Source: Intoshia linei (taxonomy: Eukaryota; Animalia; Orthonectida). Taken from it: 38,143 nucleotides of DNA. Below are positions 9,498 to 36,389 of this stretch, in pieces. The stretch lies in the NCBI GenBank assembly GCA_001642005.1, contig LWCA01000230.1, forward strand, positions 1 to 38,143, written 5' to 3'. Numbering within the stretch: position 1 is the first letter of the stretch; every line of letters starts with the position of its first letter. The notes below the pieces were generated by a model. The model saw only the letters and a program-made list of their open reading frames with translations. It was not told the DNA's origin and did no database searches. The translations under genes and the position numbers were made by a program.

Positions 9498-10374
9498 CTA
9501 TTTAAAGAGTGTAAATAGCATATATACTAATCTTTTAATTTTAAATGTTTAAATTTAGTTTAGTAACATGATAAAATTTGTATCTAAACACTGAAAAATA
9601 TAAAGTATATAAATTTGTTTGCAAAATCAATAATTTTATATTAAAAAATGTCTGACTTTTGATAAAAATTAAAATTATTATGTTTCTAAACTATTGTAAA
9701 ATATGCAGTGATTACAAGAATTCTTTTAATTTATGTACATTTTAATTGCATGTAAATGAATTCAAAATTTATAATTACGATAAATATTAAAATTTAAAGT
9801 TTTTTTACATATACAAATACAAGTTTGTTTAGTATCATCATGTATAACTGTTTTATGTTTATTTTTACCCTTTAATTTATACGAAAGCATACTTATTAAT
9901 CCCTAACACAATTTGACAGGGTAATAATCTCACATAGTTTAGATTCCAATATTTATACGTATACCAGTAACTTCCTAGCAGGAAGGCACAATCTGTCAAA
10001 TAAAAAAAAGTAATTGTAACAAATTAATTTGATTGTTTGGATTTTGGACCCGGTTTGGAAACTCTATTCTAAGATATGTAATTTAACATAATATAATGTA
10101 TATAATATTTTGAAGCATATTATTAAAAATTTATCAAATTTTGACACACTACATATATGAAAAATAATCTTAATTTTAATATATTATTATTTAAATTGGT
10201 TTGATTAAAAATAATTATGTTAATTAATTTTATGAGTGTGACTATACACTTATTTAACGACGTTCTTTATAAAGCGTTAAATCAATTTATTTTTTGATTT
10301 ATATTTTCTTTAATTCTATGATTGGTTTTATATTTGTATAAATATCTTTATTTTAAGAATTTTAAGATCTGGGA

Positions 10375-16483: not shown

Positions 16484-19095
16484 TTATTTGCACACTTCAA
16501 TAAAATTCTGAATGAGAATTTTAATATTTTGATTTTTAGAAAAAAATTTAAATTGACACCGATTACTGAAAATATTTTTTTCATTGACAAGTGAAAGAGA
16601 TTGCTGAAAATCTTCATTTTCTTCCATTTCATAATTTTCTACATTATCAACATAACAGTAATTACCCATCATAAATTTGACATGTAAACAAGGGTACTTG
16701 CTAGAAATTTTATTCAAAATATCCGAGTAGTTTAAATACAATACATTTGTAAAAAGAGAATAAAAAAAAGATACAAATTGATAAATTGATTGAAATAATG
16801 TAGAAAAGCTGAATTTGAAATTTTTTTTAAAATATTTTAAAAAATTGAATACTGTTGGAAATATGAGTTCGCCATCTACAATTAGTCCAATTATCATTAA
16901 ATTATTCAAATTATTTTCAATCTTTTTTTGGGTTTTTAAATTTGAATTATTATAGATATTACGATTTTTGAAATGTGCTGTTTTAGGTCTATTTTTATTA
17001 TTTGGTATATTTTCAATTGAATCAGACTCACTTGACGTGTAATAACAATCTGTTGATATTGAACCCCACGAGTTATCCAGAATTTGAAATTCATCATCAT
17101 CCATGTCAGAATCAATTTCCTTTACACTTTCAAAACAAAAAGTATGACTTTTACGTTGTGTAATGTTAGACTTTTTACAAATTTTGGATTTTTCATTTTG
17201 TTTTATTTCAGGTATATATGCTGTTTTATATTTGCCATCGGATTCCTCCTTTTTTAATTGTTTCCAGTTGCCCTTCTTTTCATTCATTTCACCAAAAAAG
17301 TTTTGGAAAAACATCATGCTGATTGGACCTCTCAAATGAAATACAATATTATGGCCTACAAAATCATATTCATATAAAATTTCAATTAAACGATCCGTGT
17401 AAAAATTGATCATATTCACATTAAATATATTCGATTCTTGGACAATATAAGCTAGCACAGTATAACTAAATAATTTAATTAAAAATTTAATAATAAAAAA
17501 AAAAGTAATCTTTATTTTTTAAATGTCTCATTATACATAATTATATAATAAAATTACTTTTTTTTAAGATAAATGCTTTTGTAAACGGCACTTTTTGCAA
17601 ATTTATCGTCTCCGATAAAAATAACCAATTTTTCATTTACTATATTTAAAAATGTAAATATTTATAATACAAACTAATTCCTCGTTAACGGAATAATTGG
17701 TCCAGAAAAAAATCTCACTCGGTTACGAGGATTTTTTTGGGAAAACATTCTCGTTAACGAAATTTTTTATAAATAATGCATATATTAAAACAGTGGTTCT
17801 CGATTGGGGTTCAAAATTATATGACTGGGGTTAGTAAGATTCAAATAAAATATGGAAAAATTTTAATCAACTTTTATTTATTTTTATAGAAGAATTTTTA
17901 TTATTTATTACCGAGTTTCTAGATGTTCATTACCCCGAAGCTTAGATGACCGCTACATTATTATTTCAAAAATCCCACTTTTATCCACCATTAATAAACT
18001 TTAGTCAAAAATACCATTTTAAGCCCTAAAGAAAAATCCGATTTTACGAAATCATATGAAAAAAATTAACTTAATCAAAACCACAAAATAAAAAATCCAT
18101 TTTAATAACCCTTAAGGTAAAAATACCCCTTTTTCCAATATTTTTTTGCAAAACACGATTTTACCAAATTTTATGAGAAAAACCTCTTATTCCAACCCCA
18201 AAATAAAATCCAATATTATCAACGCTTTAGGGAAATACCCTCTTTTTCCAATATTATTTTGAAAAATACGATTATACTAAATCTTATGAGCAACAACTTT
18301 TTAATCAAAAACTCAAAATAAAAAATAAAATTTTAGCAACCGTCAATCAAAAATTCTTCAATTTCAAATATTTTTTTGAAAAACACTATTTTACTAAATC
18401 TTATGATGAAAAACCTTTGAAATTTTTTATCAATGTTTTATATTTCATGTTTTCCTTGGGCTCCAAAAAAATAAATATTTTGAAATGGGGTTCGTAAACT
18501 ATTTGAAACGAATACTATTGCATTAAAATAATGAAAAGATTTTAATTTCAATTACTTAACATATATTTGCAGGTATATATCAAAAAAAAATAATTTTTTT
18601 TACATCTTAAAGTTTTAGTATAATTATGATGCTAATCATTTTAAGTTAAAATTTAACGGAACTTTTTGTACTTTAGAAAAAAATTAAATAAAATTCATAG
18701 TCCGTTATTCAGGATTTTTTTTTTGGATAACGAGGAATTCAGTTAAATAGGAATTAGCCTGTATAAATGTAACATAATCGTCCTTACCGATTAAATAGTG
18801 TCCAACCACCAATTTTATAAATTTTTATTTAAAATAGCCAATCAAAATAATAATAAACTATTGAGTTTATAGATATGTATGGTAGATACTATATATCCAT
18901 ACAGTTTATATATAAAAATTTTTGAAATGCGAATACAGCACATATTTTGATAAGTAATGCTAAAATAAAGGCGGCCCATATATACTAATATATACAATTA
19001 CCTTCAATTTGAAGATGGACATTTTGATAAACATTCTTTGATATTTTATTTTCGGGGAAAGTAATAATATAGTCATCATCCTCAAAATTAGCCAT
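16484..19095 (-). CDS. TMEM53: TMEM53 / DUF829 alpha-beta-hydrolase-fold-like protein, 3 exons, ~385 aa, with large internal insertion
   Basis: Exons 19002-19095, 17558-17639 and 16484-17465 splice in frame. MANFEDDDYIITFPE resembles human MASAELDYTIEIPD. KLVIFIG...VYKSIYLKKNYTVLAY resembles PVVILLGW...KYSAIYHKRGCIVIRY. DRLIEILYEYDFVGHNIVFH resembles QKLLELLFDYEIEKEPLLFH. LMIIGLIVD resembles LRVVGTIFD. Human sequences are recalled from memory. Confidence 0.8.
17670..18761. mobile_element. Tigger/pogo-like MITE hosting a family A element
   Basis: TA-flanked TIRs CAAACTAATTCCTCGTTAAC...GTTAAATAGGAATTAGCCTG. Subterminal CTCGTTAACG/TAACGAGG palindromic motifs. Confidence 0.75.
17791..18520 (+). 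mobile_element. hAT MITE carrying internal ~29-bp tandem array (family A)
   Basis: Ends CAGTGGTTCTCGATT...AATACTATTG. TSD TATTAAAA/CATTAAAA. Array at ~17965-18420. Confidence 0.8.
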
Positions 19096-20529: not shown

Positions 20530-23500
20530 TTAACAATTCTCATAATTATTGCCGCATAATTCAATGATACTTTGCTTACTTGCAATCGAATAATAAGAAA
20601 CATATATTCCCATTTCACTTGACCCCAAACTTGTAACACATCGTAAATGTTCAAATGCAATATGAATCAAACTAAATCTTTTATTAATAGAGTAAGTAAA
20701 TAATACATTTAAACTACATACCATATATTGGTTTTAGAAAGGGTACTAGAGAGGTTCATATGCAAAAATATTTTTTTAAAATATACCAGTACAAATAATT
20801 GAAATGTAATCTCTAAAGCAAAAGTGGGCAACCTTATGATGGTCACGGTATAACCTCACAAGGAAAGAGAAAAACACAAGAGAAGTATAAAAGAAAGATA
20901 TATAATACTTTTTTATCCTGATAAATTCTGATAATTTGGCAAATCAAACACATTAAAAATTTAACTAATAACGTTCATCGTACCACGCGTGGCACGTGGT
21001 AACCGTGGAAATAGGTGTATTAATGAATCTTTATTCATATTTTCTTATCCTATCAAAGAAATTTTTCATCAAATCACAATTAATCCTTGATAATTAATTA
21101 ATAAAATAATTACTACCGCTGTTAGTACTTAGAAAAATGACTGTGGATTAAAAAATGAAATCTATGGACATATAAAAATTAAAATAAAATCATTGGTGTA
21201 GGTTGTCCATTATTGCTCTAAAGGAGATACACAAAAATATAAAAAATGTTGCATCATAGATTATATCAGTGTTTCTTAAACATAGCTATACAGACCCCAC
21301 TTTCAATAAAAAGTTTTATAATTTAATTTAACATTATTTAAATTAAAAAGTTTTGGTGTTTTAGACCGGGAAGATAATTTCAGACGTTAAAAATTTTTCT
21401 CAATAAAATGAAAGAAGTCTGTCTTGGAAGTTGTAGTAATTACGTTTTTTTAAGTTGTAGGAATTTTAATTATTCAATATTAATTGCTATTTGCCAAATT
21501 TTGGGTAATAAAATGGTAATTTGAGTTCTTGATATTAAAGACGCAAATTTCTGAGAATTCAATTTATAATAAAACACTCACTGGAAAACACTTATTAAAA
21601 TTATTTAAATTTGTGTTATTTTTCTATTGGGTATTGTCAAGTATGATTGATAAGCTTTTCTAACATATCTATATTAGAAAGTTACACATCCCTGATATAA
21701 AATAAAATGTTAAATGTATACGTTATATATGGCGAAAAATTGATTCGTAAAATTTGTAGTACATGTTCGAAAAAAATGTAAATGTATTGTCCATTGCAAT
21801 CTAAATAATTAAAATGAAATATCAGTATTATTAATAGTGACTATAACAGTGATTCTCAATTTGTGATCCGCGGGCCATTTTGAAAATACTTTAAAAAATT
21901 TTGTTTTTGTTTAAAAAAATCTATGGAAAAATTAAAAAAAATGGGAATATTCAAAAATTGCAAGAACACATTGTCTGAAAAATATAGTTTCATTTTTCAC
22001 CGTTGGCTACTTTTGAATTGATTAAAAAAAGATAAATTCATTTTTTTTCAAGATCAACTGGGATAAAATGTCTCAAACTAATTTTATTTACAATGACAAG
22101 ACTATTAATTGATTAAATAATTAGTAAAGTGTTTTCTTTGCCGTAATTAATCCTTCATTTTTAGGAAGCAAAGTTTTCTGAATGTTACCTGGGAATATTG
22201 TATTAGTGACAAGTTATGACTCATAACTTTTTTTAAAAAAAACGGGATTTAAAGTTTTTTCCGTGGATACTCAAATGTATCTTAATTTTTGGTCGGATAA
22301 AGCTCACCCATAAATTTTGTCTGTAAATTTCTGGGATTGTCAAGTTTCTAAATAAATGTTTACACATACAGAAAGATGTACATTTTTAGCAATTTGTAAC
22401 TTATGTAATTAAGAATATATATATTAAAAATTTTCAACTAAAAGTTGAGAATGACATATACAATGACATTTAAATTTTCTTAAACATTACGTATTGTAAC
22501 GGGATTAGGACAAACTAATGAAAAATTTGACGTAATTTCATTGTTCTTCAAAACGGAAATATTTACTAAAAAAATATAAAATTATGTAATTAATAAAAAT
22601 TACCATCTGTACAAAGCAAAGTACACTTTGCTTCATAAAATATATGAACAAACAACAAGGGAGATTTTGTCAACAATGAAAATTTGTCTAAAATATGTAA
22701 TACAATAACATTAAAGCAACATAAATAATAAAATATGTATTTTAAGGGAAGTTTTTTTTCATGCAATTTTTATAGACTTTGAAGATAATATTGGGACTAA
22801 CATTTGGTAGGGTTTTTAAGGGAAGTTTTTTTCACCAAATTTTTAATGGTTTTGAAGATAAGTTTGGTCCCAAGATTTGGTAGTGTTTTTAAGGGAATAT
22901 TTTTAACATTTAACGTTAGGATCTTCAAAATTGTTCCCTTAAAAACCCTACTAAAATTGTGGCTAAAAAAGGGTTAAAAACCGTACCAAGTTTTGGACCC
23001 AAAATTATCATCAAAATCTTTAAAATTAAGTGAAAAATTAATATGATAAATTATTAAAATCTATGATTATGCAGCTCTAAGATGTATCGCTTAAATGAAT
23101 ATAGCTCTAGAGCAAGGGTTCTCAACCTTTTTTAAAAATTGCCCCCTCCATAATTCATAAACAAGTTTTTATTTACTCAATTTTTTAAAGAATCCGTCCA
23201 TAGAACCAATAATTATCTTAAAAAAAATTGTAATACTTTTGTATGTTATTTTAGACATTGGAAAGCATTAACAACATAGTAAAATAAGTTAATTAACAAC
23301 ATAAAAAATGTTATTTTAAATATACAGTCAATTTAACCAACAGCAATTACATTAAAATTTCTTGTTCGTTAAAAAAAAGTTAACGAACAAACAAAATTCA
23401 TTTTTAATTCATTTATTTTTTTATAAAAATCACATATTGTTTTGGGTCTTTTTTTTAATATAGTTTCTTTCACTGTTTGTAATGCGATTAGGCCATTCAA

Positions 23501-26500
23501 GTTTCAAAAATAAAGAACTTTTCTAGTTTATCAATACATTCTAGATATAATGTCATCTTCTATGTCGATTTCACTACAGGTAGAATAACCAATGCTGTCT
23601 TTATGATTGGTGTCTTCTTCTATAAGCGGTATCAAAGAATCGATGAATTCATCGTCACTATAGTCGTTTTCATCATACGCACGGAATTCATCTGTGACAT
23701 TTCCATTATTTTCCACAAGATTTATCACTATTTGATAAAACGTATGTTCTAGAATTAGAATTTTTAAAAAACAGGCCTGTCTCATCGCAATTATAAATCT
23801 CAATATGACTATATTTCTCTTTACTTCTAAAAAAATCTGAAAAAGTTTCAAATTCACTTATATTAACAACACCTGCCTCACCACTAATAACACGAGAACG
23901 AATATTATGACGTTTTTAAAAACACGAAAACCAACCATTTGAAGCTCTGAAATTGGGTTTTTTTAGCCGTTTTCCGATTTTAAGAGCCATTGTTTGAATC
24001 GTATTTCCTGAATAATAAAATTTTTCTATCTCTTTCGAACAAACCATTCATATATGGTTTTTCAATTTCAGCCGTTGCAAAATTAAAAAAATGGGTTTGT
24101 CCTCAATAAAAATAAATAAATAATAAAAATAAATAATTTTTTTTTTAAGATTTTAAAAAGTTTGTTCGTTAATAAATTTAATTTTTTATAGTAATTGTAT
24201 ACCCATAAATTATTAATATTTTGTTTTTTCGTTAAAAGATAGGTTTATCATGTTGTTCGTTAAATTGAGGTTTGACTGTACTGCTAAATATCGATAAATT
24301 AATAATTCACTATCAGAAAATTGTATTAATAAGATTTTAATTTTTCAAATTATAATTTATAATAACAAATTTATAATTTATTAACTCTTTTTAGAGATTA
24401 TTTGTTAAAATTTTTAAATAAAGTATTTTATGAAATAAAATACAAAAATCGCCCCTATATTATAATTTCGCGCCCGATGGGACAATTCGCTCACAGTTGA
24501 GAATCACTGCTCTAGAGTATATAATCCGATTCAAATAGTGTACATTTCATTTGTTTCATTCATAGAACCATCATTTCAAAATATTTCTTTTTTTGGACCA
24601 AAAGAAACTTGAAATATACAACATTTATGAAAAAATTAAAAGTTTTTTCTCGTAAGATTTGGTAAAAGCGTGTTTTTCAAAAAAAAATTTGAAAAAGGTG
24701 ATTTCCCCCTTAATTTAGGTTGGTAAAATTGGATTTTTTATTTTGGATTAAGAAGTTGTTACTCATAAAATTTGGTCAAGTTGAATTTTTGAAAAAATGT
24801 TGGAAAAATCCTCTTTCTAATAAGTTAGGTTGATAATATAGGATTTTTTATTAATATTGATATTAATAGTGGGATATTTTAATTAATAATGTAGCGGTCG
24901 ACTAGGTTTTAGGATAAATTCACAACATCTGGCTACTTTGTAATAAATATTAAAAATTTTAAAATTAACTAAAGTTGACAAAATGTTTTGTACATTTTAT
25001 TTGAATCTCACGGACATTCAATGAATTCATTGAATTCAATAAAATGATTTTTTTCCAATAATCTTTCTATTAGGAATAGATTTCGTACATATTAAAAATT
25101 AATTCTTTGCGATATTTTTAAACTAATAGGTGACACTGAAAAAGGGTTGGGCGACTAGTGGTTTAATCCATAACTAATATGAACAACTGCTGCATATTAT
25201 AAAATTTCATATATTTAAAAAATACCAACATAGCTAGCTGATCCACAATCATAAGTCACTAAATTATTGTCACAACAATTTAAAAATGTATCATTATTTT
25301 TGTCAAAAATAATAAATCGTGAAACATGTTTAGATTCAAAGCTTTGAATAAGTTTAAATTGAATTTTTTTAGAATCTAAAAGGTATAAATGTAGACTTTC
25401 AGTAGTTTCGACAAATAAATAAAGACATTTTTCATGAGAATGAAACCCAAATTCCATTGTGACCACACTAGAATCAAATTCCTTAAATGGTAGCCTTACA
25501 ATTGAACAATGTTTATTAGATTCTTTCTTTGAAATTGAAGCAACATCAGCAAATTTGATGACATAGATAATTCTTTTAACTCCTGCCACAATAATAAGTA
25601 ATGAAAAATGAGCATCAAATTTAATTTCATGTATAGATTCGAAAGAATCTACCGCAAATAAATTTTTGTTTTGGGTGCAATACAAAAATAAATTGTTATC
25701 TCCTCCGATAGCCATATAATTTTGAGGTAATAATGTACAGCAAGTTAAACAAGTATTTTCAAAACTTTTTACAATACAATCACTAGATATTTTTTGATTT
25801 AATAATACGGTGCATAGTGGAGACATTAATTGAAACGATTGTTCAAGTGATTGAAAATTCAATACAATAGTCGGATATTCACCAGTCAAAGGAAGTATAG
25901 TGAATTGATCAATGCATTTAATGACGACGTAAATTTTTTTATCATAATCTTTCCCGACACATGTATAATAATAAATAATTTTAGCGACATGGGTTAAATC
26001 AAATGTTTTTAGACATTTTTGAGTCAATTGACCTTTTCGTAGTTCATAAAGCATCATTTCATAAAATGACAAATTTACCATACATTCAATAAATGATTCA
26101 TTTCTTTTGATTCGACATGAAATTTGTCGTGAAAAATTTTTACATTGATCAACTTTTATCGATTTATCAAAATTAACCATAAAATCGGAATTAACAATTT
26201 CACCATTGCATTTCGTACGTAGTTGATCCACACAATCGACATGAATTACGATACCACATTCTAAACATTTCGCCGCATTATTTACAAAATAAACTGGTTT
26301 CATGCAATTCATACACGTCTGTGTTTTGCAATTTAACCCTCGTTCAATCACATGATCATTGTGACAGTCGGGTTTTTCGAATACTTCACAATTTTCAATT
26401 TGTTTGTTTACGCTTTGAGAATTTTCGCTAACTGTAAAAACATGGAATTAAAATATATAAAATAAAAAATAAATATACGGTATTTATCTTTTATTGATAA

Positions 26501-29500
26501 TTTCTTTTTTAATTTTTCAATTTCCAGGTTCTTTTTTTGCAATTTCAATTCCAGCGATCTGACGGTATCCATTTTTTTTAAAACAATTTTTTTCGAAAAA
26601 AACTAAATTTAAAAAATAAAATTTACAAAAATAAATATATTTATATTACGGCCAAAATATTTCTTTTAGGTTTAGAATCAATTTTTTCATGAAGAAAATC
26701 AATCAACTTTATATGTTGTTGACCAACAGTTTTTAATTTTATTTGTTCTTCCTCGTTGGCCAACTAAATATAAAAAATTAAAAGTCTTCAAAAATGCATG
26801 TTTTACTTTTACAAGTTCCAATTTATTTTTGACGTTTAGTATGTCTTTTTTTAAAAGTGTACTTTCTTCTTTAAAGTTTTGCAAGTTTAATTTTAAATTT
26901 ACATTATCTTTTTTTAAAGTATGATTATTTAGAATAACATTGTTGAGTTGAATTTTATAATTAGTGTTATCGTCATTCAAATTTTGAATTTTTTTAACAT
27001 TTTCATAAATTAATTTTTTTGAATTTTCCAAATTTAATTGTAACAGTTCATTTTCTTTTGATAAAATTTCTTGTTTATTGTTTAAAAATTTTGAATAATT
27101 TGTTAATTTTTCCAATCTTTTTTTACTACAGTTCAATTCATCTTCAACTTTTTGAAAATTGTTTAATTTTTTTTCAAATAATTTTCTAAATTATAATTAT
27201 AATGATTGTAAAAATATTACATTTTAGTCATTTTTATCATACAATAATCAATTGTGACAAGAAATCAAATCAATTATACAAATAAAACTCAAGTTTTCTA
27301 ATAGTTTTTTTACCAGTTTGTGAAAAGATTTATTTAAATTTTAATTAAGAATACTTAGTAATTAAAATCTAATTGTTAAAAAATTTTTGAAAAGTAGTAA
27401 AAATATATTTTTCCTCAATTTTTTAAATTTGAGGGAATAATGGGAAATCGGATAATAATTAATCTAAAACATGTGTCTTTTATAAAGGAAATAATGAATA
27501 TAATTACATTTTTGATTTTTGCGCAGAAATTACTTTTGTTTGATCTTTAATCGTACATTCATCTTTTCCGGATTCAATTTTTAAATACTTTCTAAGTTTT
27601 AATCAAAAGTTTCAGAATACATCTTTTCATATTTCCATCATAAAAATTTTAAATAACGTAAATATAAATCAGTGTTTCCCAACCTTTCTTATGCTAGGCC
27701 CCACTGAAAAAAAATTCGAGAGAATTATAATAAAATAATAATAAAAACAATAATAATGTATTTATTTTTTAGAATTAATGAGACAATTGAGCCTGACGAT
27801 TCTGACAGAGTTTATTAATATTAGGTACTAATGTTGTAAGCTTTAATCGTAGATTATTTTTTTTGTCAGTAAGTCTAAAACTGCACTAAACCCGTATTCT
27901 GCTAAATAAGAGGATGGAAATGGCAACAAAGCAATCCTAGCAAAAGTAATTAAAGTCGGATAATTTTGTAAATTTGCAAATTTGGCATTTTGCATATACT
28001 CGTCAATTTAGTTAAATTTGAATTCAATAGCCCACGATCATTAAAGATATATTTGTTTTTTGTCATTCTAATAATTTAATAATACAATTAATTGGTTCAA
28101 GTATCACATAACCATTTATAAACCGTAAAATATTGTATAAAATTAACAATAAATTAATCTAAAGTTTCATAATCCTATACATTTATAATATTTCCCAGGA
28201 CCCACCAAAAAGTCGTAGGCCCCACCAAATTTCCAATGCCCCACTAGTGGGGCCTGGCCCCACGGTTGGGAAACATTGATATACATATAATATAAGTTAA
28301 TGTTATAAGAATTGTACGATCTATATGAAAATTTGAGTCCCGCTCCACAGAATTTTCAGTCCTTCTAAAATGTATACCCCCAGGTTCACATTTAAAGTCA
28401 GAAAAGGAAATAATTGAAGAAGAATACTCATTAATTTTATAATTTAAATACTCTTTTTCCTCAAATTTTTTAATTTTAGCAGAAAATTCCAACATTTTCG
28501 ATTCATACTCGGATAATTGATATTCTTGTTCATTAATCATTGTCAATTGTCTTTTGATTTTCTAAATAATGATAAAATTGATATTTAATTACTACAGCTT
28601 TAGCTTGGCTGTTTTGTACTATGTACAAACAGCACCTAGCTCTGAAGAGGGCGGATATTTTTAATTTAATCAAAAAAATTAAATCATCCATAAAAATGCA
28701 ACTATTCAATATTAACAATGCTTTAAAGGAGTGGGACCCAAACGTGTGTTATTACATCATTTTTATTTTTAAATTATTATCATTTTAGAATCATTAAATA
28801 TATCAAATGTTTTAATAAAATAATTTCCATAAAAAAAGTGTAAATAGTAAATTTCTTTTTTGAACATAAAGAATTAACTTAACATTAAAATATATTATGT
28901 ATACTTTTTAATTAATTTTAACCAAGTAAAAAGTGACACTCAATAGCGTCATTGTATCAGGTTTACATTTTAAAAAAATTTTTAGTACCACCAAATAGAC
29001 CACCCTTCATTATGACAGGATGATAAAAAAAATTAACACTTTCGTTTAATTAACATAATTGTAATTATAAATATATACATTTATATATATTATACCGTCA
29101 TCATTTTTTCGCGATCCAAATTCTTTTCCTCAGAATCTTGTAATTTTTTGTTTACAATGTTAATTTCGTCTTTATATTTATTTTTGAGAGATTCTATTTC
29201 AATTGTATATTCATTTTGAATAGATTCTAATCGCATCGATTCACTATTTTGTATTTTTTTATTTAACAATTTTTTCTAATAATAATAAATAAATTAACAA
29301 TAGACACTATACCTCATCCAAATCGCACCTCAATTCAAGTACAATCAATCGTTGTTGATCAGCCTCCTTTTTATAACTTCGAACTTCCTTTTTTAAGGAT
29401 TCAACATTATTATTATCAATAGTTTCAGTTAGAGTTAATATTTTCTTCTTTTGTAAAGCAATTTTTAAAATTTTTTCGTTCAATACACATTTTATTTGAT

Positions 29501-32500
29501 CGACTTCATTATTTTTACTATCTGCATAATATGAAATTTCACTTTTGAGATTAGAATTATCGGTTTTAATTTCGTCCATTTCGGTCAATAGCTTCTCAAT
29601 TTTTGTTTCAAATGCATTATTAATAGATTCGCTATGAAAAAATTAAGATACATAATTATAGTTTGTATATATCAGTGTTTCCCAACCTTTTTTACTACAT
29701 TACCCATATTATAGTACTTATTTGGATATTACCCACTATATTGTTTAACTACTTTTTGGATAATCAGGTTTTTAGAATAAGCCATATAAATTTTTTAAAA
29801 AACTAATTTTACAAAATAGTAAAATAAAGGGGAAATTGTGTTTTTGACCCAGAAGGACTCAATGGGAAAAATTATATTTCATACGTTACTGTGCATGCGG
29901 CGCAAAAAAATAACAAAATTCCTATTTTTTTAGAACAAATTTCGCGATTACCCATGAAAAATATCAAATTACACACTGGTGGGTAAATACCCACAGGATG
30001 GGAATCATTGTTCTAGATGGTTAATAAAAATATAATATTAAAGTTAGATTTACTTGGAGGACTGATCATAGGGAAACCCTGATATAAGCTACATATAATA
30101 ATCATATTTGTGAGTATAATTATAATTCAAGTACAGTATTCACTACACAACTCGCCATTAATTTAAAATATAAACTAAAAGTTTTAAAACCATTTTTCAA
30201 AATAAGTTAAGTTATTTTGTATTACAATTTACATTTTATTGCAATGTAACCCTTAATTAAAGGTTTTATCTGCTGTTTCTATAGTTTCAAATTCTCAATC
30301 TCGCCAAATTTTTCTAAATCCCAAGAATGGCGAGTTATAGAGAGAATACTGTATATAAAAATGTAATAAAGTAATGTTTTTCAAAATGTTACTTTATAGC
30401 AAACATAATACATGATAAGTACTCCGGTCGCGGGTTTCGAATATTTTAATAAAAATTAAGGAAGGTCAATAGACCAGATTCATATCGATATTAAGATAGA
30501 TATTTAAAAAATTCAAAGTTCAGTTTTAAGATTTACAGCATAACCCCTTATAACTAAAATCATAGAATTAATAAACAAAAGTTTTTACATTTCACAACCC
30601 TTTCATTTTTGCAGACCTGTGAAAGTGAAACGATATTTTGTTAAAAAGGTAAATGTTATAAATTATATATGAAAATGTAACCCTCTAACTTTAAATGGTA
30701 TTCGAATTGCTTCCTTGCAAGCGATTTTTCCAAAAATTTTTCATAACATTTACATTTTAACATTTTGTACATATTAATCAGGAATAGTAGAAACCGGACC
30801 GGCGGTTGAGAAATGGTGATCTATCTCAATCTTTAGAGCACTGATTCTTAATCGGTGCACCGCGGCGCACTTGTGCGCCATGAGTAGAGTTGATGTGTAC
30901 CGCAAAGAAATTTGACGTTATTTTATAAATTTTTAAAAATTAGTGTCAAACTTTTACATTGACAATTCTTTAATGAATATTTAGGGTTTGACTAATTAAT
31001 ATAATTTATATATATTAAATACTATGGTGAGTACCAAAAATATCAATATTTCATCATACATAAAATCTTCTTGACTAAATTTAACTGATCAAATAAAAAG
31101 TATTTGGGTATTATTATTATAACTTTATCGTTTTTAATCTTTATACATTTATTTATACATTTTAGAATGTCGATGTTTTCTTCTCATCAAAATTTAAGGT
31201 GTGCTCAAATTTTTATTTATTTCACAGGTACTCTTGAAGTAAAAGACGTTAAAAAATATTGATATAGATGGAGCGGAGAGCATTTGATTTAATATGTAAA
31301 CTTTAACTTATGCTACTATAATAACTGTGGCATTACTAATTCATTAGTAGCACCAAATAACAATAATGTATAATGCTCAGTAGAATTTATACTATAATGT
31401 TTATAATCGTGAATTGTTATAATTATAATTAAATTACAGCTTGTTTATAAATAATGAATTATTATTTTCTGTCACAGATTGTATATCAACATCTCGGTCC
31501 TTCAATTCCTGATCAAATTGTTCGAGTTTTGTCAATTGCTTCTTTAATACTCGGTTTAAATACTAAATATCAAAATTAAAATGTTTGTGAATATTACAAT
31601 TAACTATTAATAAAAGTATAAATTTTACAACAGTCATGTAAAACATACAAAGCGTCATGAAGTTTGATTTCACATGACTCATTTACAAGTTAATACGTGT
31701 CTTAGAGCAGAGTTTCTTAACCGTGGACCCAAAAATATTTTTCGACAGTGTTATTTGATTCAAATTTTTATTTTTTTAATACACATGCATTAAAGTAAAT
31801 TTCCTTAAAAATGTCCATGTCAAATATCAATCCTAGATGTGAACTACTCTTCCAAAAAAATATCTCAAAATTTAGACTCTAAATGTAAAGTCAAGATAAT
31901 TTTTGTATTTCGGTTCGAATTATATATTAATTATACATAATTATAACAGGGTGGTCCAAAAGACATGGCGAGTGAAAGCCGAAAAATATATTTTACACAG
32001 TTATTTTTCATCAGTAAGTAATGATGGGCAATGTAATAATTATATTTCTGTAAATAAATTTTTTCAAACGGTACGCTCTGGCGCATTTGTGCGTCCCAGT
32101 AAATTTTATGTGTGCCAAGCTAATAATTGAAAATGAGCTATACACCCTTTTACAAAGGGTCACTTAACCCAGATTTTTTTTCTTAAATTATTAAAAAACT
32201 CCAATTTGGGTAAAAATCAAAATCAGAAAATCTAGTTCGAAATTCCACGTCATATTCAATCACATATTTATTTTTTATTATTTACTTGTTTTACAAAATA
32301 TGTTACTAATAAATTTCGCGGGGCATACAATTTGATCTTGCGGACCACGCTTTGAGCCACCATGTATAATATTATAAATAAACCTCGTTATCCACAATGT
32401 ATACATTAATTTTTTGATTCAGAGACTCATTTTCTGTTACAAGTTTATTTAATTGATTTTTATACAAATTTAACTCAAATTCCAATTTTTGAATTAAAAT

Positions 32501-35500
32501 CCCTCTCTCATTATTTTTTTCATCTTCAATATTTGTATCAGATATTTGAAGTTTTTCACAATTCAAATTTCTAAAGTAAACATTCAGTTTTTGTATAATT
32601 ATTGTTAAATTATTTATTTAATTAACTTGGGATAATTCTCAAACAGAATATGACATACAAGGGTAGTCGTCAGGGATTGGAAATAATTGAAATTAATTAT
32701 GTTTTTAAAGTAATTGCAAAAATAAAAATAGAAAAATTTTTTCACGACGAAACATTGCATCAACTAATATATTTAAATTTTTTTTATGTGAAGCTAAAAT
32801 TTAATTTGTTCATTATTAATATTTCAACACTCATTGATTTTGTGGAATAATAGTAGTCAGACCTCTCATTGAGAGTTTGTCAATACCGCTATTTTAGTGT
32901 TTCGATATTTATGGCGGTATTGAGGGTTTAGCGTTGTTGAGAGTATATCGTTGTAGCGAATATATCATGGATACTGTTATTATGTATTAATAATCATTCA
33001 CATAGTAAAATAATAATAAAATGAAAGTTCATTCATCCCACAAATGCGTTTTTTAATTTAAGTTTGTAAATTTAATTAGGGTTTGATAAAATATAATTAA
33101 AATTAGATTAATTTTTTTAAAATAACAGTTGAGATTAAAATATTTATAATTTTAAATTAAGGATTAAACTCATTTTAATCAAATTTTTTTTTAAAATATT
33201 TGAAAATTTTGGCGGTACCTACAATCCATGTACAATGTAAATTATATAAGGTCAAGCCATCAGTTGACATTTGCGCTTTGTTGATATTGAAAAAAACAAA
33301 AAATCTTTATCATTATCAATATTTTGATTGGCTTCTCTTTATTTATCTTTAAATTTCAAAACTGACTTTAAGTAAGTTTAACTTTTTATCAGTAAATTTT
33401 TTTATCCAATTCAAAGATTTTAAAGATAATTTTTCCACAACAATTTTGTAGGTTTTAAATTATTTCAGTCAATTTTTAATAATGTCACTCTATAAATACT
33501 TCATTCAGCTGATTCGCCCATTTGAAACCGATAAAAATTATTTTTAAAATATTTAAAAATAATATTCCCTTAAAAACCATGTTGAGAGCATTAAAAAAGA
33601 AATTAATTTAAAACCACAATGAGTCAATCAAAAAATTTGTTATTTTCAGTGAGAACGTACTAATTAATAATTAATTTAAAAATGAAATTACCTTTCGAGA
33701 CATTTTCTGAAAAACCGGTTAAAAGAAAATCCAATTAAATTAAAATTAACAAAATTCAAAACATCTTTATTCAATTCTCTCCAGGAACTATAAATATTAT
33801 CAACATGAGAATTTTCTTGCAAATTTTCTTTGATATCTTGAATATTAAAACAATTCTTTATATTTTGATTTAAAAAAAAATCGTGTAGTAGAATTTTATG
33901 AAAATTTAAAATATTTGCATCATTGGTAAACAATAACTGATGAATCAAACTTTTGTAATCAGTATCATCAAATTCAATGCGATGATTAATATCTTTAACA
34001 CTTAAAATGCGACGTGTTGGTTTTCCGTACATTATCCTATATAAACATACGCCATAAGCATAAAAATCTGACTCAACTGTTGGTAAGTTTGGTTTCCCGT
34101 TGTTGTAATAATTTAATGACATGTAAAAAATATTTTCAATCATCTAATATGCTAAAATTAAAAAAAGGCTATAATTAAAAATTACCAAATGTTCTCTGTC
34201 TAAACGATTTTCATTCTTACAAATAGAATGTTCAAAATTACAAATTTTAAAATGACCAGTGGAAGAAATTAAAAAATTTTCAGGTATTATGTTTCTAAAA
34301 ATTAAAATATACATAATATTAATACTAATACTAGAATATCGTAATCCATTGAATAGTGTATAATTTATAATTATAATAAATATCCATAATAATGGCAGGC
34401 GTATATAAGACTTACATTACAAGTGGTCTCATATTTCATATATTAATTAAGAATCATCAAATTCAACATTACTTTTCAAAATACTGAAAAATTCTTTTTG
34501 ACGTTGCAATTATAGGGACACGATAAATCAGTGATTATCAAACTTTTTTAGAGCTCTTTTTTTCTCTTTTTTAATTGGCTTGTATTTATAGCGTCGTTAT
34601 TTTAATCCGTAAAGTGTCAGTATTTTAAATAGTTTGTCAGTTTATATAATAAATTGTCAGTATTTTAAGTGCCAGTTGACAAGATGTCAGTATAAATAAT
34701 TTATTGTCAGTCTTTAAATTAGAAGGGCAGTGAAAAAAATTATTTTGTCAGTACTTTAAATATACTGTCAGTATATCCTTGACTACACAGTATATACTGA
34801 CAAATATGTAATTAAATATTAACAAATGATTAATTAAGATGGAATAATTCAGTTTAAAGTAAAAATTAATCTGATATGATGGTTTCACTTGAAGCAAATT
34901 TGGGAACCACTACTTTAAAGGATTGATAATAGCGAAAAGTTCTATTTTTAAATTAGATTTTCAACGTGAATTTATTTTTTTGGTAGAATAAAAATGTGCC
35001 CTCGTGAGAGCTAGGTGCTGTTTTTACGTAGTACATAACAGTCAACCTAGCACTTTTATAAATGTAAGGATTATAAATTGTATAATATAATATAATACCC
35101 ATGTATAAACCCCAATTGGTGAAGTCCATCTATACATTTACCCATAGAATCAACATAAAATAAAAGATTTTCAAATTTGATTATTGGATTTCTTAATGAA
35201 TTAATTATACATTTCAATTAACATTATAAAAATATTTTAAATACTTAATTATAAAATTTTCTAAATTTCCTCCAATACAATATTCCATAATTAAATGAGC
35301 TTGCTTTTGATAAAAGAAAGAATAATACAATATTGGTAAAAAAAAATGATTTTCTGTTTTAGCCAAAATTTTTATTTCATTATAGCATTTATTGCTCTAA
35401 AAATAAAAAATTAGAAAAAATATATTGACAGGTACAGTACATAGTACATAGCATATACGCGTCACATAATTAGCATAAAATATATTTTTTTAATGTTGGA

Positions 35501-36389
35501 TCAGTTAAGTGTATATAATTTTTGATATTGAAGATGAATCTACTAAATTATTTTTCCGTAGTTTTGAAATAAAAAATATAATAAATTAAAAACTGAAAAA
35601 TTTTTAAAAAAAATGATGAAAAAATTCATTTACTGTGGATATAATCATCTAAAGGATTTAGAGAACTGACAATATAAATAAAAATATATAATTACAAAAA
35701 CGCCGTCGTTTAAAACATTGTCACGAGATGTGTGTAAAACTTGAGATATATTCAAATGATCACATATTATAGTTTTCATAACATAGATTGTATCACTTGG
35801 GTCTTTAACAAGATCAATTTGTGTCGTTTTCTTTTTACAAATTGTATTTACTTTTACAAAATCTGACAAAGAAATTGAAAATTTACTGAAAGATTCATAA
35901 ATATCGATATCTAATAGGTTATAATATACAAATATAAATTATAGGTTTATAACTAAATTATCAAAATATGAAAAAAGGTATTTTTACTAAACCATATATT
36001 TACTAATTTGTAAACTAAATAACGCATTTTCATAAAAATAATAATTCAGAAAAAAATCTAAAATTATTATCAGTTTAATTTAAACTTTAAAAGAGTTTTC
36101 ATTTACGAAATTGTTAAAATTGATTATTATCAAAGTTTAGTAAGAAAAAAAAATTATTTACAACTTTATATTATTATGAAAATTTAAAATTACAATTTTC
36201 TAAAAATTCTTTTCCATAAAAACCATCCGATTTTAAAAAATTAAAAATATTTGTAAATAAATCGATGAGAGATTCTTTGGATATGAGAAAATTTTTTCTG
36301 CTATTATATTCATTTACTTCACATTTTTTTAAAAGTAAATATGAATTGTAGGATTTCTCGTCTAGTGGTGCAAGTTTATAATTATCCAT
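20530..36389 (-). CDS. CIT: Citron Rho-interacting kinase homolog (degenerate AGC kinase domain - coiled coil/Rho-binding region - C1 - PH-like - CNH), 20 exons, ~1461 aa
   Basis: Exons with consistent phases: 36194-36389, 35741-35910, 35245-35396, 35099-35191, 34186-34294, 33692-34143, 32384-32570, 31438-31562, 29313-29631, 29096-29275, 28452-28561, 27508-27591, 26813-27185, 26650-26763, 26479-26602, 25226-26431, 22604-22687, 22491-22565, 20722-20812, 20530-20671. Kinase subdomains: IYVMK, NEIKIL, LIMEYCIGGNL, LHQLGFIHGNIIPENFLISSTGHFKICNFE, SDFYAYGVCLYRIMYG; AGC tail LIGFSF. Citron-type motif VGQQHIKLIDFLHEKID (human CIT, from memory: ISQQTKLIDFLQAKMD). C1 domain H...CMNC...CLEC..IH.DC...C. 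CNH-like end GIYVSYY...IIELCGN. The last four exons are less certain. Confidence 0.9.
22741..23037. repeat. ~74-bp tandem repeat followed by an inverted copy (foldback-like)
   Basis: TTTAAGGGAA at 22741, ~22815 and ~22888. Reverse-complement arm TTCCCTTAAAAACCCTAC...TTTTGGACCCAAAATTATC at ~22934-23037. Confidence 0.7.
23113..24509. mobile_element. hAT MITE hosting the pogo element
   Basis: TIRs CAAGGGTTCTCAAC...GTTGAGAATCACTG. Perfect palindromic TSD CTCTAGAG (23105-23112 and 24510-24517). Confidence 0.9.
23325..24278 (-). mobile_element. pogo/Tigger-family deleted transposon (CENP-B-type HTH + start of DDE domain), nested in a hAT MITE
   Basis: TA-flanked TIRs CAGTCA(AACCTC)AATTTAAC. Minus-strand translation FRASNGWFSCF*KRHNIRSRVISGEAG...IYNCDETGLFFK is the pogo signature. 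An internal deletion joins this to an acidic tail (ORF 23531-23857). Confidence 0.9.
24525..25015 (-). mobile_element. Family A element, end-degraded reverse copy
   Basis: Colinear with 7515-8217 (GATTCAAATAG...GTAGCGGTCGACTAGG...TTGAATCTCACGGAC). Confidence 0.75.
27670..28278 (-). mobile_element. Deleted hAT (Buster-type) element with frameshifted transposase C-terminus
   Basis: TIRs CAGTGTTTCCCAACC...GGTTGGGAAACATTG. TSD ATATAAAT/ATATACAT. Minus-strand ~27775-27965 reads YPTLITFARIALLPFPSSYLAEYGFSAVLDLLTKK, then after a frameshift LRLKLTTLVPNINKLCQNRQAQLSH*. Confidence 0.9.
29673..30010. mobile_element. hAT MITE
   Basis: CAGTGTTTCCCAACC...GGATGGGAATCATTG ends. Subterminal ATTACCCA repeats. 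TSD degenerate. Confidence 0.7.
30134..30351 (+). mobile_element. Tigger/pogo-like MITE (family B)
   Basis: TA-flanked TIR CAGTATTC...GAGAGAATACTG. Second copy of 7582-7824. Confidence 0.85.
30839..31261 (+). mobile_element. hAT MITE (family C), degraded
   Basis: The GCGGCGCACTTGTGCGCCATGAGTAG left part and TGAAGTAAAAGACGTTAA right part match 3123-3388. Confidence 0.6.
34577..34830. mobile_element. Second copy of the TGTCAGT MITE-like element (right end truncated)
   Basis: Same GGCTTGTATTTATAG start and GTGTCAGTATTTTAAATAGTTTGTCAG segment as 2129-2460. Confidence 0.7.
34872..35062 (+). repeat. Dispersed ~190-bp repeat with terminal hairpins (copy 2)
   Basis: Colinear with 11047-11236. Confidence 0.85.

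What the first reader, a model, noticed from the sequence alone, without database searches (positions are those of the whole stretch)
33692..36389. Citron kinase homolog with an intact frame but a predicted dead kinase domain (HRD to HGN, DFG to NFE, no Gly loop, no APE)
Seen in the spliced translation: ICKKKTTQI replaces GxGxxG, HGNIIPEN replaces HRDIKPEN, CNFE replaces DFG and YMSLN replaces YMAPE. The beta3 Lys (YVMK), alphaC Glu (NEI), hinge (MEYCIGG) and AGC hydrophobic motif (IGFSF) remain. The 20-exon model keeps frame, so this does not look like a pseudogene. Established: CIT/Sticky is an active DMPK-family kinase of the cytokinetic midbody with kinase-independent scaffold roles, and mammals make a kinase-less CIT-N isoform; losing both catalytic Asp residues is a standard pseudokinase signature. 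Inference: this lineage turned Citron into a full-length pseudokinase scaffold, implying cytokinesis without Citron catalysis or a neofunctionalised paralog. The ORF track hides this because the catalytic loop is split by the 34295-35098 intron.
Basis: partly seen in the sequence, partly recalled or inferred. Interest (0 to 1): 0.8.

Follow-up and report, generated by a model that had tools for sequence, protein, structure and literature searches.

The report
Citron kinase gene with dead kinase
The tiny parasitic worm Intoshia linei has one Citron (cell-division scaffold) gene, and its kinase part has lost the residues needed for catalysis while the gene stays intact, so this animal probably divides its cells without Citron's enzyme activity.

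Summary
The window is a whole 38,143-bp contig of Intoshia linei (Orthonectida). Six minus-strand exons (36389-33692) encode the first 405 residues of the public, uncharacterised protein OAF69787.1.

- ICKKKTTQI replaces the Gly loop.
- HGNIIPEN replaces HRDIKPEN, across the 35099|34294 GT-AG junction.
- CNFE replaces DFG, and YMSLN replaces APE.
- The beta3 Lys, the hinge and the hydrophobic motif are kept.

No alternative exon restores any motif.

The Citron assignment holds, but mainly through the C-terminal C1-PH-CNH half. That half scores 47 bits against a CIT profile and 7 bits against an MRCK profile. The kinase domain alone cannot be placed within the DMPK family (AU p 0.50).

The decay is gene-specific. 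Intoshia's own ROCK, NDR, S6K, Akt, PKA and PDK1 keep the canonical motifs. ROCK, a paralogue, keeps 85 of 109 CIT-conserved columns; this gene keeps 39.

I found no second CIT and no MRCK in the 41.6-Mb assembly.

The frames are far too long for chance in 24% GC DNA.

The best reading is a non-catalytic Citron scaffold. Precedents exist: C. elegans citk-1/2 lack the domain entirely, and mammals make CIT-N. I therefore rate it a new variant of a known kind, of moderate interest.

The parts
36194..36389 (-). Exon 1: ATG and the N-terminal extension that precedes the kinase domain (aa 1-65).
   Evidence: Maps to P0001. phmmer alignments to CIT orthologues start at about aa 31.
35696..35910 (-). 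Exon 2: N-lobe beta1-beta3. ICKKKTTQI replaces GxGxxG; the beta3 Lys is kept in YVMK.
35245..35396 (-). Exon 3: alphaC (YNEIK) to the hinge (MEYCIGG).
   Evidence: Pfam Pkinase profile positions 44-90, E 1.6e-4, for the exon alone. Alignment.
35099..35191 (-). Exon 4: alphaE, ending in ..GFIH plus the first two bases (GG) of the Gly codon that replaces the HRD Arg.
   Evidence: donor GTATTA.
34295..35098 (-). Intron 4 (804 bp). It splits the catalytic loop and holds a 20-bp tandem array at 34610-34668.
   Evidence: No alternative catalytic exon lies inside it.
34186..34294 (-). Exon 5: degenerate catalytic loop NIIPEN (Asp to Asn, Lys to Ile, Mg-binding Asn kept) and CNFE in place of DFG.
   Evidence: Pfam Pkinase profile positions 124-146. 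Alignment to MRCK beta.
33692..34143 (-). Exon 6: end of the activation segment (YMSLN for APE), C-lobe (DFYAYG for DxWSxG) and AGC tail. The NFD motif is lost; the hydrophobic motif IGFSF is kept.
   Evidence: The 151-codon frame is open.
26480..32570 (-). Exons 7-16: central region of about 560 residues rich in K/E/L/N, presumed coiled coil (aa 407-968).
   Evidence: Exon map. Only weak matches to CIT coiled coils (18 bits). No formal coiled-coil prediction was run.
25226..26431 (-). Exon 17: C1 zinc finger (aa 992-1044), a PH-sized spacer and the N-terminal half of a CNH domain (aa about 1195-1346). This is the part that identifies the gene as Citron.
   Evidence: Pfam C1_1 and CNH, both below cut-off. 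The full Cys/His pattern is at aa 992. CIT HMM 62.7 bits on the exon. CIT versus MRCK comparison.
22483..24101 (-). Exons 18-22 of the public model: a doubtful 3' end. The exon at 23590-23748 is a fragment of a repeat present at 15 or more other loci.
   Evidence: aa 1413-1468 match many contigs at 59-95% identity. No CNH C-terminal half was found downstream.

Best explanation
This is the single Citron (CIT/Sticky) orthologue of Intoshia linei. Its N-terminal DMPK-family kinase domain has become a fast-evolving pseudokinase.

Shown:
- The catalytic Asp is Asn and the catalytic-loop Lys is Ile.
- The DFG Asp and Gly are Asn and Glu.
- The Gly-rich loop has no glycine.
- APE and the AGC NFD motif are gone.
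- The beta3 Lys, the Mg-binding Asn, the hinge and the hydrophobic motif remain.
- All frames and splice sites are intact.

Inferred:
- The domain neither binds ATP/Mg productively nor transfers phosphate.
- The protein acts as a non-catalytic scaffold, much as CIT-N and the kinase-less nematode CITK-1/2 do. The central coiled coil would provide dimerisation and cleavage-site or midbody localisation. The C1 and CNH regions would provide membrane and RhoA contact.
- The dead kinase fold is kept at most as a structural or docking module, with the tail's hydrophobic motif still packing on the N-lobe.
- Myosin regulation by Rho signalling would rest on ROCK, which is intact in this genome.
For: Motifs and junctions.

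Kinase fold still recognisable: Pfam Pkinase 64 bits. The best solved relatives are MRCK beta (58.8 bits), ROCK1 (50) and DMPK (48).

CIT identity:
- The C-terminal half against 120 CITs has a median of 21 bits (max 47.8). Against 52 MRCKs the median is 2 (max 11.2).
- Like for like, vertebrate CIT scores 20.2 versus vertebrate MRCK 1.9, and cnidarian CIT 20.9 versus sponge MRCK 2.2.
- CIT HMM 47.2 bits versus MRCK HMM 7.3.
- In the C1-PH-CNH tree the gene attaches 0.65 from the CIT crown and 2.56 from the MRCK crown. The MRCK|rest split has SH-aLRT 100.
- The kinase region scores 90.2 bits against the CIT HMM, 69.1 against MRCK and 69.7 against ROCK. The tree places it among CITs.
- The only non-self hit among 1.84e9 representative proteins is Owenia CIT.

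Gene-specific decay:
- It keeps 39 of 109 CIT-conserved columns; Intoshia ROCK keeps 85.
- Intoshia ROCK scores 448 bits on the CIT HMM; this gene scores 90.
- Its end branch sits at the ceiling of 10; ROCK's is 1.22.
- FYMINK content is 0.45, against 0.34 for Intoshia ROCK and 0.28 for CITs.
- Other Intoshia AGC kinases keep HRD/DFG/APE.

No second CIT or MRCK.

Open frames are not chance.

Scaffold precedent: C. elegans citk-1/2 lack the kinase domain (PMC13108882).
Against: - No transcript evidence was available. The exon 6 to exon 7 junction (33692|32570) and the 3' end are model-based. If that junction is not used, exon 6 would end in a stop 6 codons into the intron.
- No sister-species sequence was available, so dN/dS could not be computed. 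The open frame of the kinase exons could be maintained only because translation must pass through them, not because the fold matters.
- The strong compositional drift fits very weak constraint on the domain.
- The kinase domain by itself does not reject an MRCK/DMPK origin (p-AU 0.50).
- The PH domain and the C-terminal half of CNH were not detected.
- C1 and CNH are below Pfam's curated cut-offs.
- Drosophila Sticky does need its kinase activity for full function: the kinase-dead form rescues 47% (PMC3257531). Loss of catalysis is therefore not trivially tolerated elsewhere.
- The assembly is 3,520 contigs, so absence of a second copy is not proof.
Confidence: 0.7

Rival explanations
1. The kinase exons are a decaying relic and not a working pseudokinase module. 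Either the real product is CIT-N-like, starting downstream, or the N-terminal 400 residues are a nearly unconstrained leader that stays open only because translation runs through it.
For: - The end branch is at the ceiling of 10, and only 39 of 109 conserved columns are kept.
- FYMINK is 0.45, higher than in the gene's own C1-CNH part at 0.37.
- Pfam matches only aa 139-300.
- Mammals and nematodes make kinase-less Citron.
Against: - About 405 codons in six exons have no stop or frameshift, and all GT-AG sites are intact, despite saturation-level divergence in DNA with 9% stops per codon.
- The domain is still recognisable at E 1.6e-17 and at 90 bits on the CIT HMM.
- The hydrophobic motif, hinge, beta3 Lys and alphaF Asp/Gly are kept.
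- If translation started downstream, these exons should have collected stops.
Confidence: 0.15
2. The gene descends from MRCK (Gek) or another DMPK-family member, not from Citron. The two families share the kinase-CC-C1-PH-CNH layout.
For: - The C1 domain sits at aa 992, close to the position I recall for MRCK (about 1010) and far from the CITs scanned here (about 1360-1580).
- Pairwise kinase-domain scores do not discriminate: medians are CIT 57.5, MRCK 56.2, DMPK 62 and ROCK 52.
- The AU test does not reject a clade with MRCK+DMPK (p 0.50).
- No MRCK exists elsewhere in the assembly.
Against: - The C-terminal half is about 40 bits closer to CIT than to MRCK by HMM. All 25 best pairwise hits are CIT, also like for like by taxon.
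- The kinase HMM favours CIT by 21 bits.
- There is no CRIB motif in any frame of the window.
- There is no KELK domain in the genome. The only DMPK_coil hit lies in a myosin II tail.
- Short proteins are expected in this compact genome, so domain spacing is weak evidence.
Confidence: 0.08
3. The domain is an atypical but active kinase, or at least an ATP-binding one, that uses non-canonical residues as WNK, CASK or HER3 do.
For: - The beta3 Lys, a nearby alphaC Glu and the Mg-binding Asn are retained.
- From general knowledge, HER3 also carries Asn at the catalytic-base position and keeps weak activity.
Against: - Here the catalytic base, the catalytic-loop Lys, the DFG Asp and Gly, all Gly-loop glycines, APE and the adenine-contacting NFD Phe are all lost together.
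- No known active kinase lacks all of these.
Confidence: 0.04
4. Annotation or assembly artefact: two neighbouring genes (a stand-alone kinase-like gene and a CIT-N-like gene) have been fused by the model, or the sequence contains errors.
For: - The fusion rests on one unverified junction across a 1,121-bp intron.
- The public model's tail is already demonstrably contaminated by a repeat.
Against: - The strand and order are co-linear and match the CIT architecture. The phase-compatible GT-AG junction lies exactly where the AGC tail ends and the coiled coil begins.
- Sequence error cannot change about 64% of conserved columns.
- Even if the gene were split, the kinase-like part would still be a pseudokinase and the only CIT-like kinase in the genome.
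Confidence: 0.03

Closest known systems
Citron Rho-interacting kinase (CIT-K) / Drosophila Sticky
   Same: - The domain order is the same: N-terminal DMPK-type AGC kinase fold with a hydrophobic motif, a long central coiled-coil-like region, a C1 finger, and CNH.
- The C-terminal half scores specifically with CIT orthologues.
- It is single-copy, as in other invertebrates.
   Different: - All catalytic motifs except the beta3 Lys and the Mg-binding Asn are lost.
- The protein is about 25% shorter (1,522 residues or fewer, against 1,900-2,300).
- The PH domain and the second half of CNH are not detectable.
- The sequence is extremely diverged, at most 26% identity in the kinase region.
- Drosophila Sticky needs its kinase activity for full rescue.
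Kinase-less Citron: mammalian CIT-N isoform and C. elegans CITK-1/CITK-2
   Same: Citron acts without catalysis through coiled coil, C1, PH and CNH (PMC13108882). This is the closest functional analogue.
   Different: Those proteins lack the kinase domain altogether, through an alternative start or by gene loss. Intoshia keeps a full-length, in-frame but dead kinase-like domain.
MRCK / Genghis Khan
   Same: The kinase-CC-C1-PH-CNH order is the same. It is the best solved-structure match for the kinase core (58.8 bits). The C1 position is similar.
   Different: - No CRIB, KELK or DMPK_coil.
- The MRCK C-terminal HMM gives 7 bits, against 47 for CIT.
Pseudokinases lacking both catalytic aspartates and the Gly loop (the class predicted not to bind nucleotide)
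   Same: The residue signature is the same: HRD Asp and DFG Asp replaced, and a degenerate Gly-rich loop.
   Different: I know of no described pseudokinase orthologue of CIT, and the paper search found none. Here the partner domains are those of a cytokinesis scaffold.

Membership tests
Citron kinase (CIT/Sticky) | N-terminal DMPK-family AGC kinase fold with a C-terminal hydrophobic motif | tested here: met
   Pfam Pkinase 64.2 bits. The best PDB relatives are MRCK, ROCK and DMPK. CIT kinase HMM 90.2 bits. IGFSF aligns with the FxGF[TS][YF] motif.
Citron kinase (CIT/Sticky) | Catalytically competent kinase (GxGxxG, VAIK Lys, HRD Asp, DFG Asp, APE) | tested here: not met
   Only the beta3 Lys and the Mg-binding Asn remain. 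The motifs read HGN, NFE, CKKKTT and SLN. No alternative exon exists.
Citron kinase (CIT/Sticky) | Long central coiled coil between the kinase and C1 | tested here: inconclusive
   Exons 7-16 encode about 560 K/E/L/N-rich residues. Only 18-bit matches to CIT coiled coils. No coiled-coil predictor was run.
Citron kinase (CIT/Sticky) | C1 zinc finger after the coiled coil | tested here: met
   The complete His/Cys pattern is at aa 992. The CIT HMM C1 segment gives 35.7-38.7 bits. Pfam C1_1 gives 22.8-23.5 bits, just under the 26.5 cut-off.
Citron kinase (CIT/Sticky) | PH domain between C1 and CNH | tested here: inconclusive
   No Pfam PH or PH_MRCK hit. A spacer of suitable length (aa about 1060-1190) exists.
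Citron kinase (CIT/Sticky) | CNH domain | tested here: inconclusive
   Only the N-terminal half is matched. Pfam CNH positions 3-135 give 20.4-22.6 bits, under the cut-off of 26. The CIT HMM gives 26.8-30.1 bits. The second half was not found downstream.
Citron kinase (CIT/Sticky) | Closer to CIT orthologues than to the paralogous MRCK, ROCK and DMPK | tested here: met
   C-terminal half. Kinase region: a 21-bit HMM preference, but the AU test is not decisive.
MRCK / Gek | CRIB (PBD) motif, KELK and DMPK_coil regions, and an MRCK-type C1-PH-CNH | tested here: not met
   No CRIB in any frame. No KELK in the genome. The DMPK_coil hit lies in a myosin II tail. MRCK C-terminal HMM 7.3 bits.
Pseudokinase | Kinase fold lacking at least one of the VAIK Lys, HRD Asp and DFG Asp | tested here: met
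   The HRD Asp and the DFG Asp are both Asn.
Pseudokinase | No phosphotransfer activity or nucleotide binding | not testable with these tools
   This needs recombinant protein assays.

The most novel reading that the evidence does not exclude
Orthonectids have rewired late cytokinesis. Citron catalysis and MRCK are both gone, leaving ROCK as the only active DMPK-family kinase. The retained Citron pseudokinase works as a purely structural or allosteric midbody or ring-canal scaffold. This change could be linked to the syncytial plasmodium stage of the life cycle (PMC6543705), where nuclear division is uncoupled from abscission. It might also be part of a wider pattern of kinase death in this genome. 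Three other first-reader notes, all unchecked, describe dead or truncated JAK, TAO and Eph kinases.
Probability: 0.15. Interest if true: 0.6.

Novelty: new variant of a known kind. Interest (0 to 1): 0.42.

Why it matters
Whether Citron kinase works mainly as an enzyme or as a scaffold is still debated. Human microcephaly mutations and the INCENP and MRLC substrates argue for catalysis, while localisation and many interactions are kinase-independent.

This gene is a natural animal in which the full-length protein is kept but catalysis is abolished, with no back-up copy. It offers a comparative test of which Citron functions are scaffold-only. It also shows which surfaces of the kinase fold stay constrained once catalysis is gone.

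In addition, the finding corrects a public annotation. UniProt's automatic name for this entry is 'protein kinase C'. The finding also flags a repeat-derived exon in the deposited model.

Tried and rejected
- Exon-by-exon searches were nearly uninformative because the exons are short and diverged. Pfam gave only weak kinase hits at the right profile positions. PDB gave PLK4 at E 0.004 for exon 6.
- The word-indexed search with the P0001 kinase region returned only itself. The ESM Atlas returned generic kinase clusters.
- I first took higher CIT than MRCK bit scores in the kinase domain as evidence for CIT. This was rejected once the whole distribution was seen: the CIT median of 57.5 is about equal to MRCK's 56-59.
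- Human-specific 'signature' residues recalled from memory (KPEN, DYMAPE, GFSY) are not conserved across CITs, so I dropped them.
- The DMPK_coil hit at C309 is a myosin II heavy-chain tail, not MRCK.
- The other CNH loci are not CIT. C3125 has a CNH at the N-terminus of a single 893-aa frame, which I read as Vps39-like without testing it. C2353 is a MAP4K (msn-like) with an intact DFG.
- An early guess of a flatworm origin, prompted by the micro-exon notes, was wrong. The cluster look-up names Intoshia linei.
- INCENP IN-box search: no hit, inconclusive.
- No structure prediction was made. P0001 exceeds the 1,200-residue limit, and a sub-range or a joined exon translation has no reference.
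- No search was run with a spliced translation of my own. The six exons were joined only once, inside a script, to check that they equal the first 405 residues of the public protein.


Full report
**What the window is.** The 38,143-bp window has 22-27% GC throughout. A search of 1.84e9 representative proteins with the 410-codon exon at 25218-26447 returned a 100% identical 1,522-residue protein, P0001. The cluster look-up names it OAF69787.1, 'hypothetical protein A3Q56_02467 [Intoshia linei]' (UniProt A0A177B663, automatically named 'protein kinase C'). It sits on a contig of exactly 38,143 bp. The window is therefore a whole contig of the orthonectid Intoshia linei. It is not human. The assembly reachable as G000 has 41.6 Mb in 3,520 contigs.

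**Observation check.**
- Mapping P0001 back to the DNA gives 22 exons, all with GT-AG introns. The six kinase exons are 36389-36194, 35910-35696, 35396-35245, 35191-35099, 34294-34186 and 34143-33692.
- The catalytic loop is split by the 804-bp intron. His is at 35103-35101 and Gly is GG|A across 35099|34294. The Asn that replaces the catalytic Asp is AAC at 34293-34291, inside exon 5, so no splice choice can restore it. NFE is AAT TTT GAA at 34239-34231.
- No HRD-like, DFG-like, KPxN, APE or GxGxxG string exists in any minus-strand frame between 33000 and 36700.
- In an alignment with 120 CIT orthologues the substitutions fall exactly on the canonical positions:

| Canonical motif (CIT consensus) | Intoshia |
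|---|---|
| IGRGHFGEV | ICKKKTTQI |
| YAMK | YVMK |
| HRDIKPEN | HGNIIPEN |
| DFG | NFE |
| DYIAPE | FYMSLN |
| DTSNFD | lost |
| FVGFTY | LIGFSF |

**Which family: first evidence.**
- P0001 has a Pfam kinase domain (64 bits) and a C1 finger. The big exon adds a weak CNH match.
- The best solved relatives of the kinase core are MRCK beta (58.8 bits), MRCK alpha, ROCK1 (50.3) and DMPK (48.4). The domain is therefore a DMPK-family AGC kinase fold.
- The kinase-CC-C1-PH-CNH order fits both Citron and MRCK.
- A region search seeded with Owenia CIT (P0002) gave 120 labelled CIT orthologues. A short-region search seeded with the Intoshia ROCK frame gave labelled MRCK, ROCK and DMPK sequences.

**Which family: the kinase domain.** Pairwise scores of the kinase region do not discriminate. 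The medians are CIT 57.5, MRCK 56.2, DMPK 62 and ROCK 52. A family HMM comparison favours CIT moderately: 90.2 bits against 69.1 for MRCK and 69.7 for ROCK. The ML tree places the domain among CITs, outside a starred MRCK+DMPK clade and a starred ROCK clade. However, forcing it together with MRCK+DMPK costs only 0.01 lnL (p-AU 0.50).

**Which family: the C-terminal half.** This part decides the question.
- Residues 960-1522 have a median of 21 bits (max 47.8) against CITs and a median of 2 (max 11.2) against MRCKs. All 25 best hits are CIT.
- The gap holds like for like. Vertebrate CIT scores 20.2 against vertebrate MRCK 1.9, and cnidarian CIT 20.9 against sponge MRCK 2.2.
- A CIT C1-PH-CNH HMM gives 47.2 bits and the MRCK HMM 7.3.
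- In the C1-PH-CNH tree the sequence attaches 0.65 from the CIT crown and 2.56 from the MRCK crown. The MRCK|rest split has SH-aLRT 100.
- No CRIB motif, KELK or genuine DMPK_coil is present.
- I conclude that this is a Citron orthologue, with about 0.9 confidence on that point.

**The degeneracy is gene-specific.** The same genome encodes a ROCK (C2995, model P0122) with intact GRGAYGEV, HRDIKPDN, DFG and SPE motifs. Its NDR, S6K, MAST, Akt, PKA, PDK1 and PAK genes also keep their motifs. The comparison with ROCK, a paralogue, is:

| Measure | This gene | Intoshia ROCK |
|---|---|---|
| Columns kept, of 109 that are at least 95% conserved in CITs | 39 | 85 |
| Score on the CIT kinase HMM (bits) | 90 | 448 |
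| End branch in the kinase tree | 10 (ceiling) | 1.22 |
| FYMINK fraction of the kinase region | 0.45 | 0.34 |

The median end branch in that tree is 0.31. CIT orthologues have a FYMINK fraction of 0.28, and this gene's own C1-CNH part has 0.37. Constraint on the kinase domain is therefore strongly relaxed compared with the rest of the gene.

**No back-up copy.**
- CNH-profile, CIT-protein, MRCK-protein and P0001 searches of the assembly find only this locus, ROCK and unrelated kinases.
- The other CNH loci are a MAP4K, and a locus whose CNH opens a single 893-aa frame. I read the second as Vps39-like but did not test it.
- MRCK appears to be absent.
- Absence in a 3,520-contig assembly is not proof.

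**The gene is maintained.** With 9% stops per random codon, the open exons are not chance: 6e-7 for 151 codons, 2e-17 for the 406 kinase codons and 6e-57 for exons 1-17. Given saturation-level divergence, neutral decay would have introduced stops and broken splice sites. The C1 finger keeps its full Cys/His pattern. The 3' end of the public model is doubtful. The exon at 23590-23748 belongs to a repeat with 15 or more other copies, and the second half of the CNH domain was not found.

**Mechanism.**
- Shown: loss of the catalytic base, the catalytic-loop Lys, the Mg-binding DFG Asp, the Gly-rich loop, APE and the NFD Phe.
- Inferred from established kinase biochemistry: no productive ATP/Mg binding and no phosphotransfer. 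The protein can then act only as a scaffold.
- In Drosophila, the coiled coil localises Sticky to the furrow and the CNH domain binds RhoA. Kinase-dead Sticky rescues only 47% (PMC3257531).
- C. elegans CITK-1/2 lack the domain entirely and still act on microtubules (PMC13108882).
- Intoshia thus looks like an intermediate state: catalysis gone, domain kept.
- Anillin, a Sticky partner, is present in the genome. The INCENP IN-box was not detected, which is inconclusive.

**Novelty.** Paper searches found no report of a Citron pseudokinase, nor any work on this Intoshia gene. Three unchecked notes describe other dead or truncated kinases in this genome. Kinase-less Citron and pseudokinase conversion are both familiar, so I rate this a new variant of a known kind, of moderate interest.

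**Limits.**
- No transcript data.
- No sister species, so no dN/dS.
- No structure model. P0001 is over the size limit, and a sub-range or joined sequence has no reference.
- No protostome MRCK in the comparison set.
- The coiled coil was not formally predicted.

Noticed in passing
window 5407-9501, minus strand: A multi-exon calpain gene. Peptidase_C2 pieces lie at 9169-9318, 8202-8588, 7186-7464 and 6844-7023, and Calpain_III lies at 5407-5640. It is downstream of the Citron gene on the same strand.
   Followed up: partly
window 23534-23915, minus strand (public exon 23590-23748): The public model OAF69787.1 includes an exon (aa 1414-1466) that matches 15 or more other contigs at 59-95% identity. 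It is therefore a repeat or transposon fragment, and the upstream ORF reads like a pogo/Tigger-type DDE region. The deposited 3' end of the gene is probably wrong.
   Followed up: partly
window 4545-4850 (+) and 27846-28007 (-): hAT-transposase C-terminal dimerisation remnants. The first scores Dimer_Tnp_hAT 21.7 bits. The second looked similar by eye but had no Pfam hit, and it lies inside a Citron intron.
   Followed up: partly
window 16487-17518, minus strand: A 344-codon open frame with no Pfam match and no match to the CIT C-terminal profile. It is far too long for chance in this composition. It could be another gene or an unannotated exon.
   Followed up: partly
window 34610-34668 (inside intron 4): Three copies of a 20-bp unit (consensus TAAATTGTCAGTATTTTAAA), with further scattered TACTGACA words up to about 34800.
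   Followed up: no
G000:C2995:10004-12889 (L008 1387-4272): The Intoshia ROCK orthologue (public model P0122, labelled 'DM-kinase') has a 962-codon intron-free frame with a fully canonical kinase domain. In this assembly it is the only intact DMPK-family kinase. No MRCK was found.
   Followed up: yes
Citron gene introns, window 22565-36194: Intron sizes are bimodal. Nine introns are 37-53 bp and the other twelve are 187-1,694 bp. At least two of the long introns hold transposon remnants.
   Followed up: no
UniProt A0A177B663 (public record of this gene): The automatic name 'protein kinase C' is a misannotation, probably triggered by the kinase plus C1 combination. The protein is Citron-like and lacks the catalytic residues.
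   Followed up: yes
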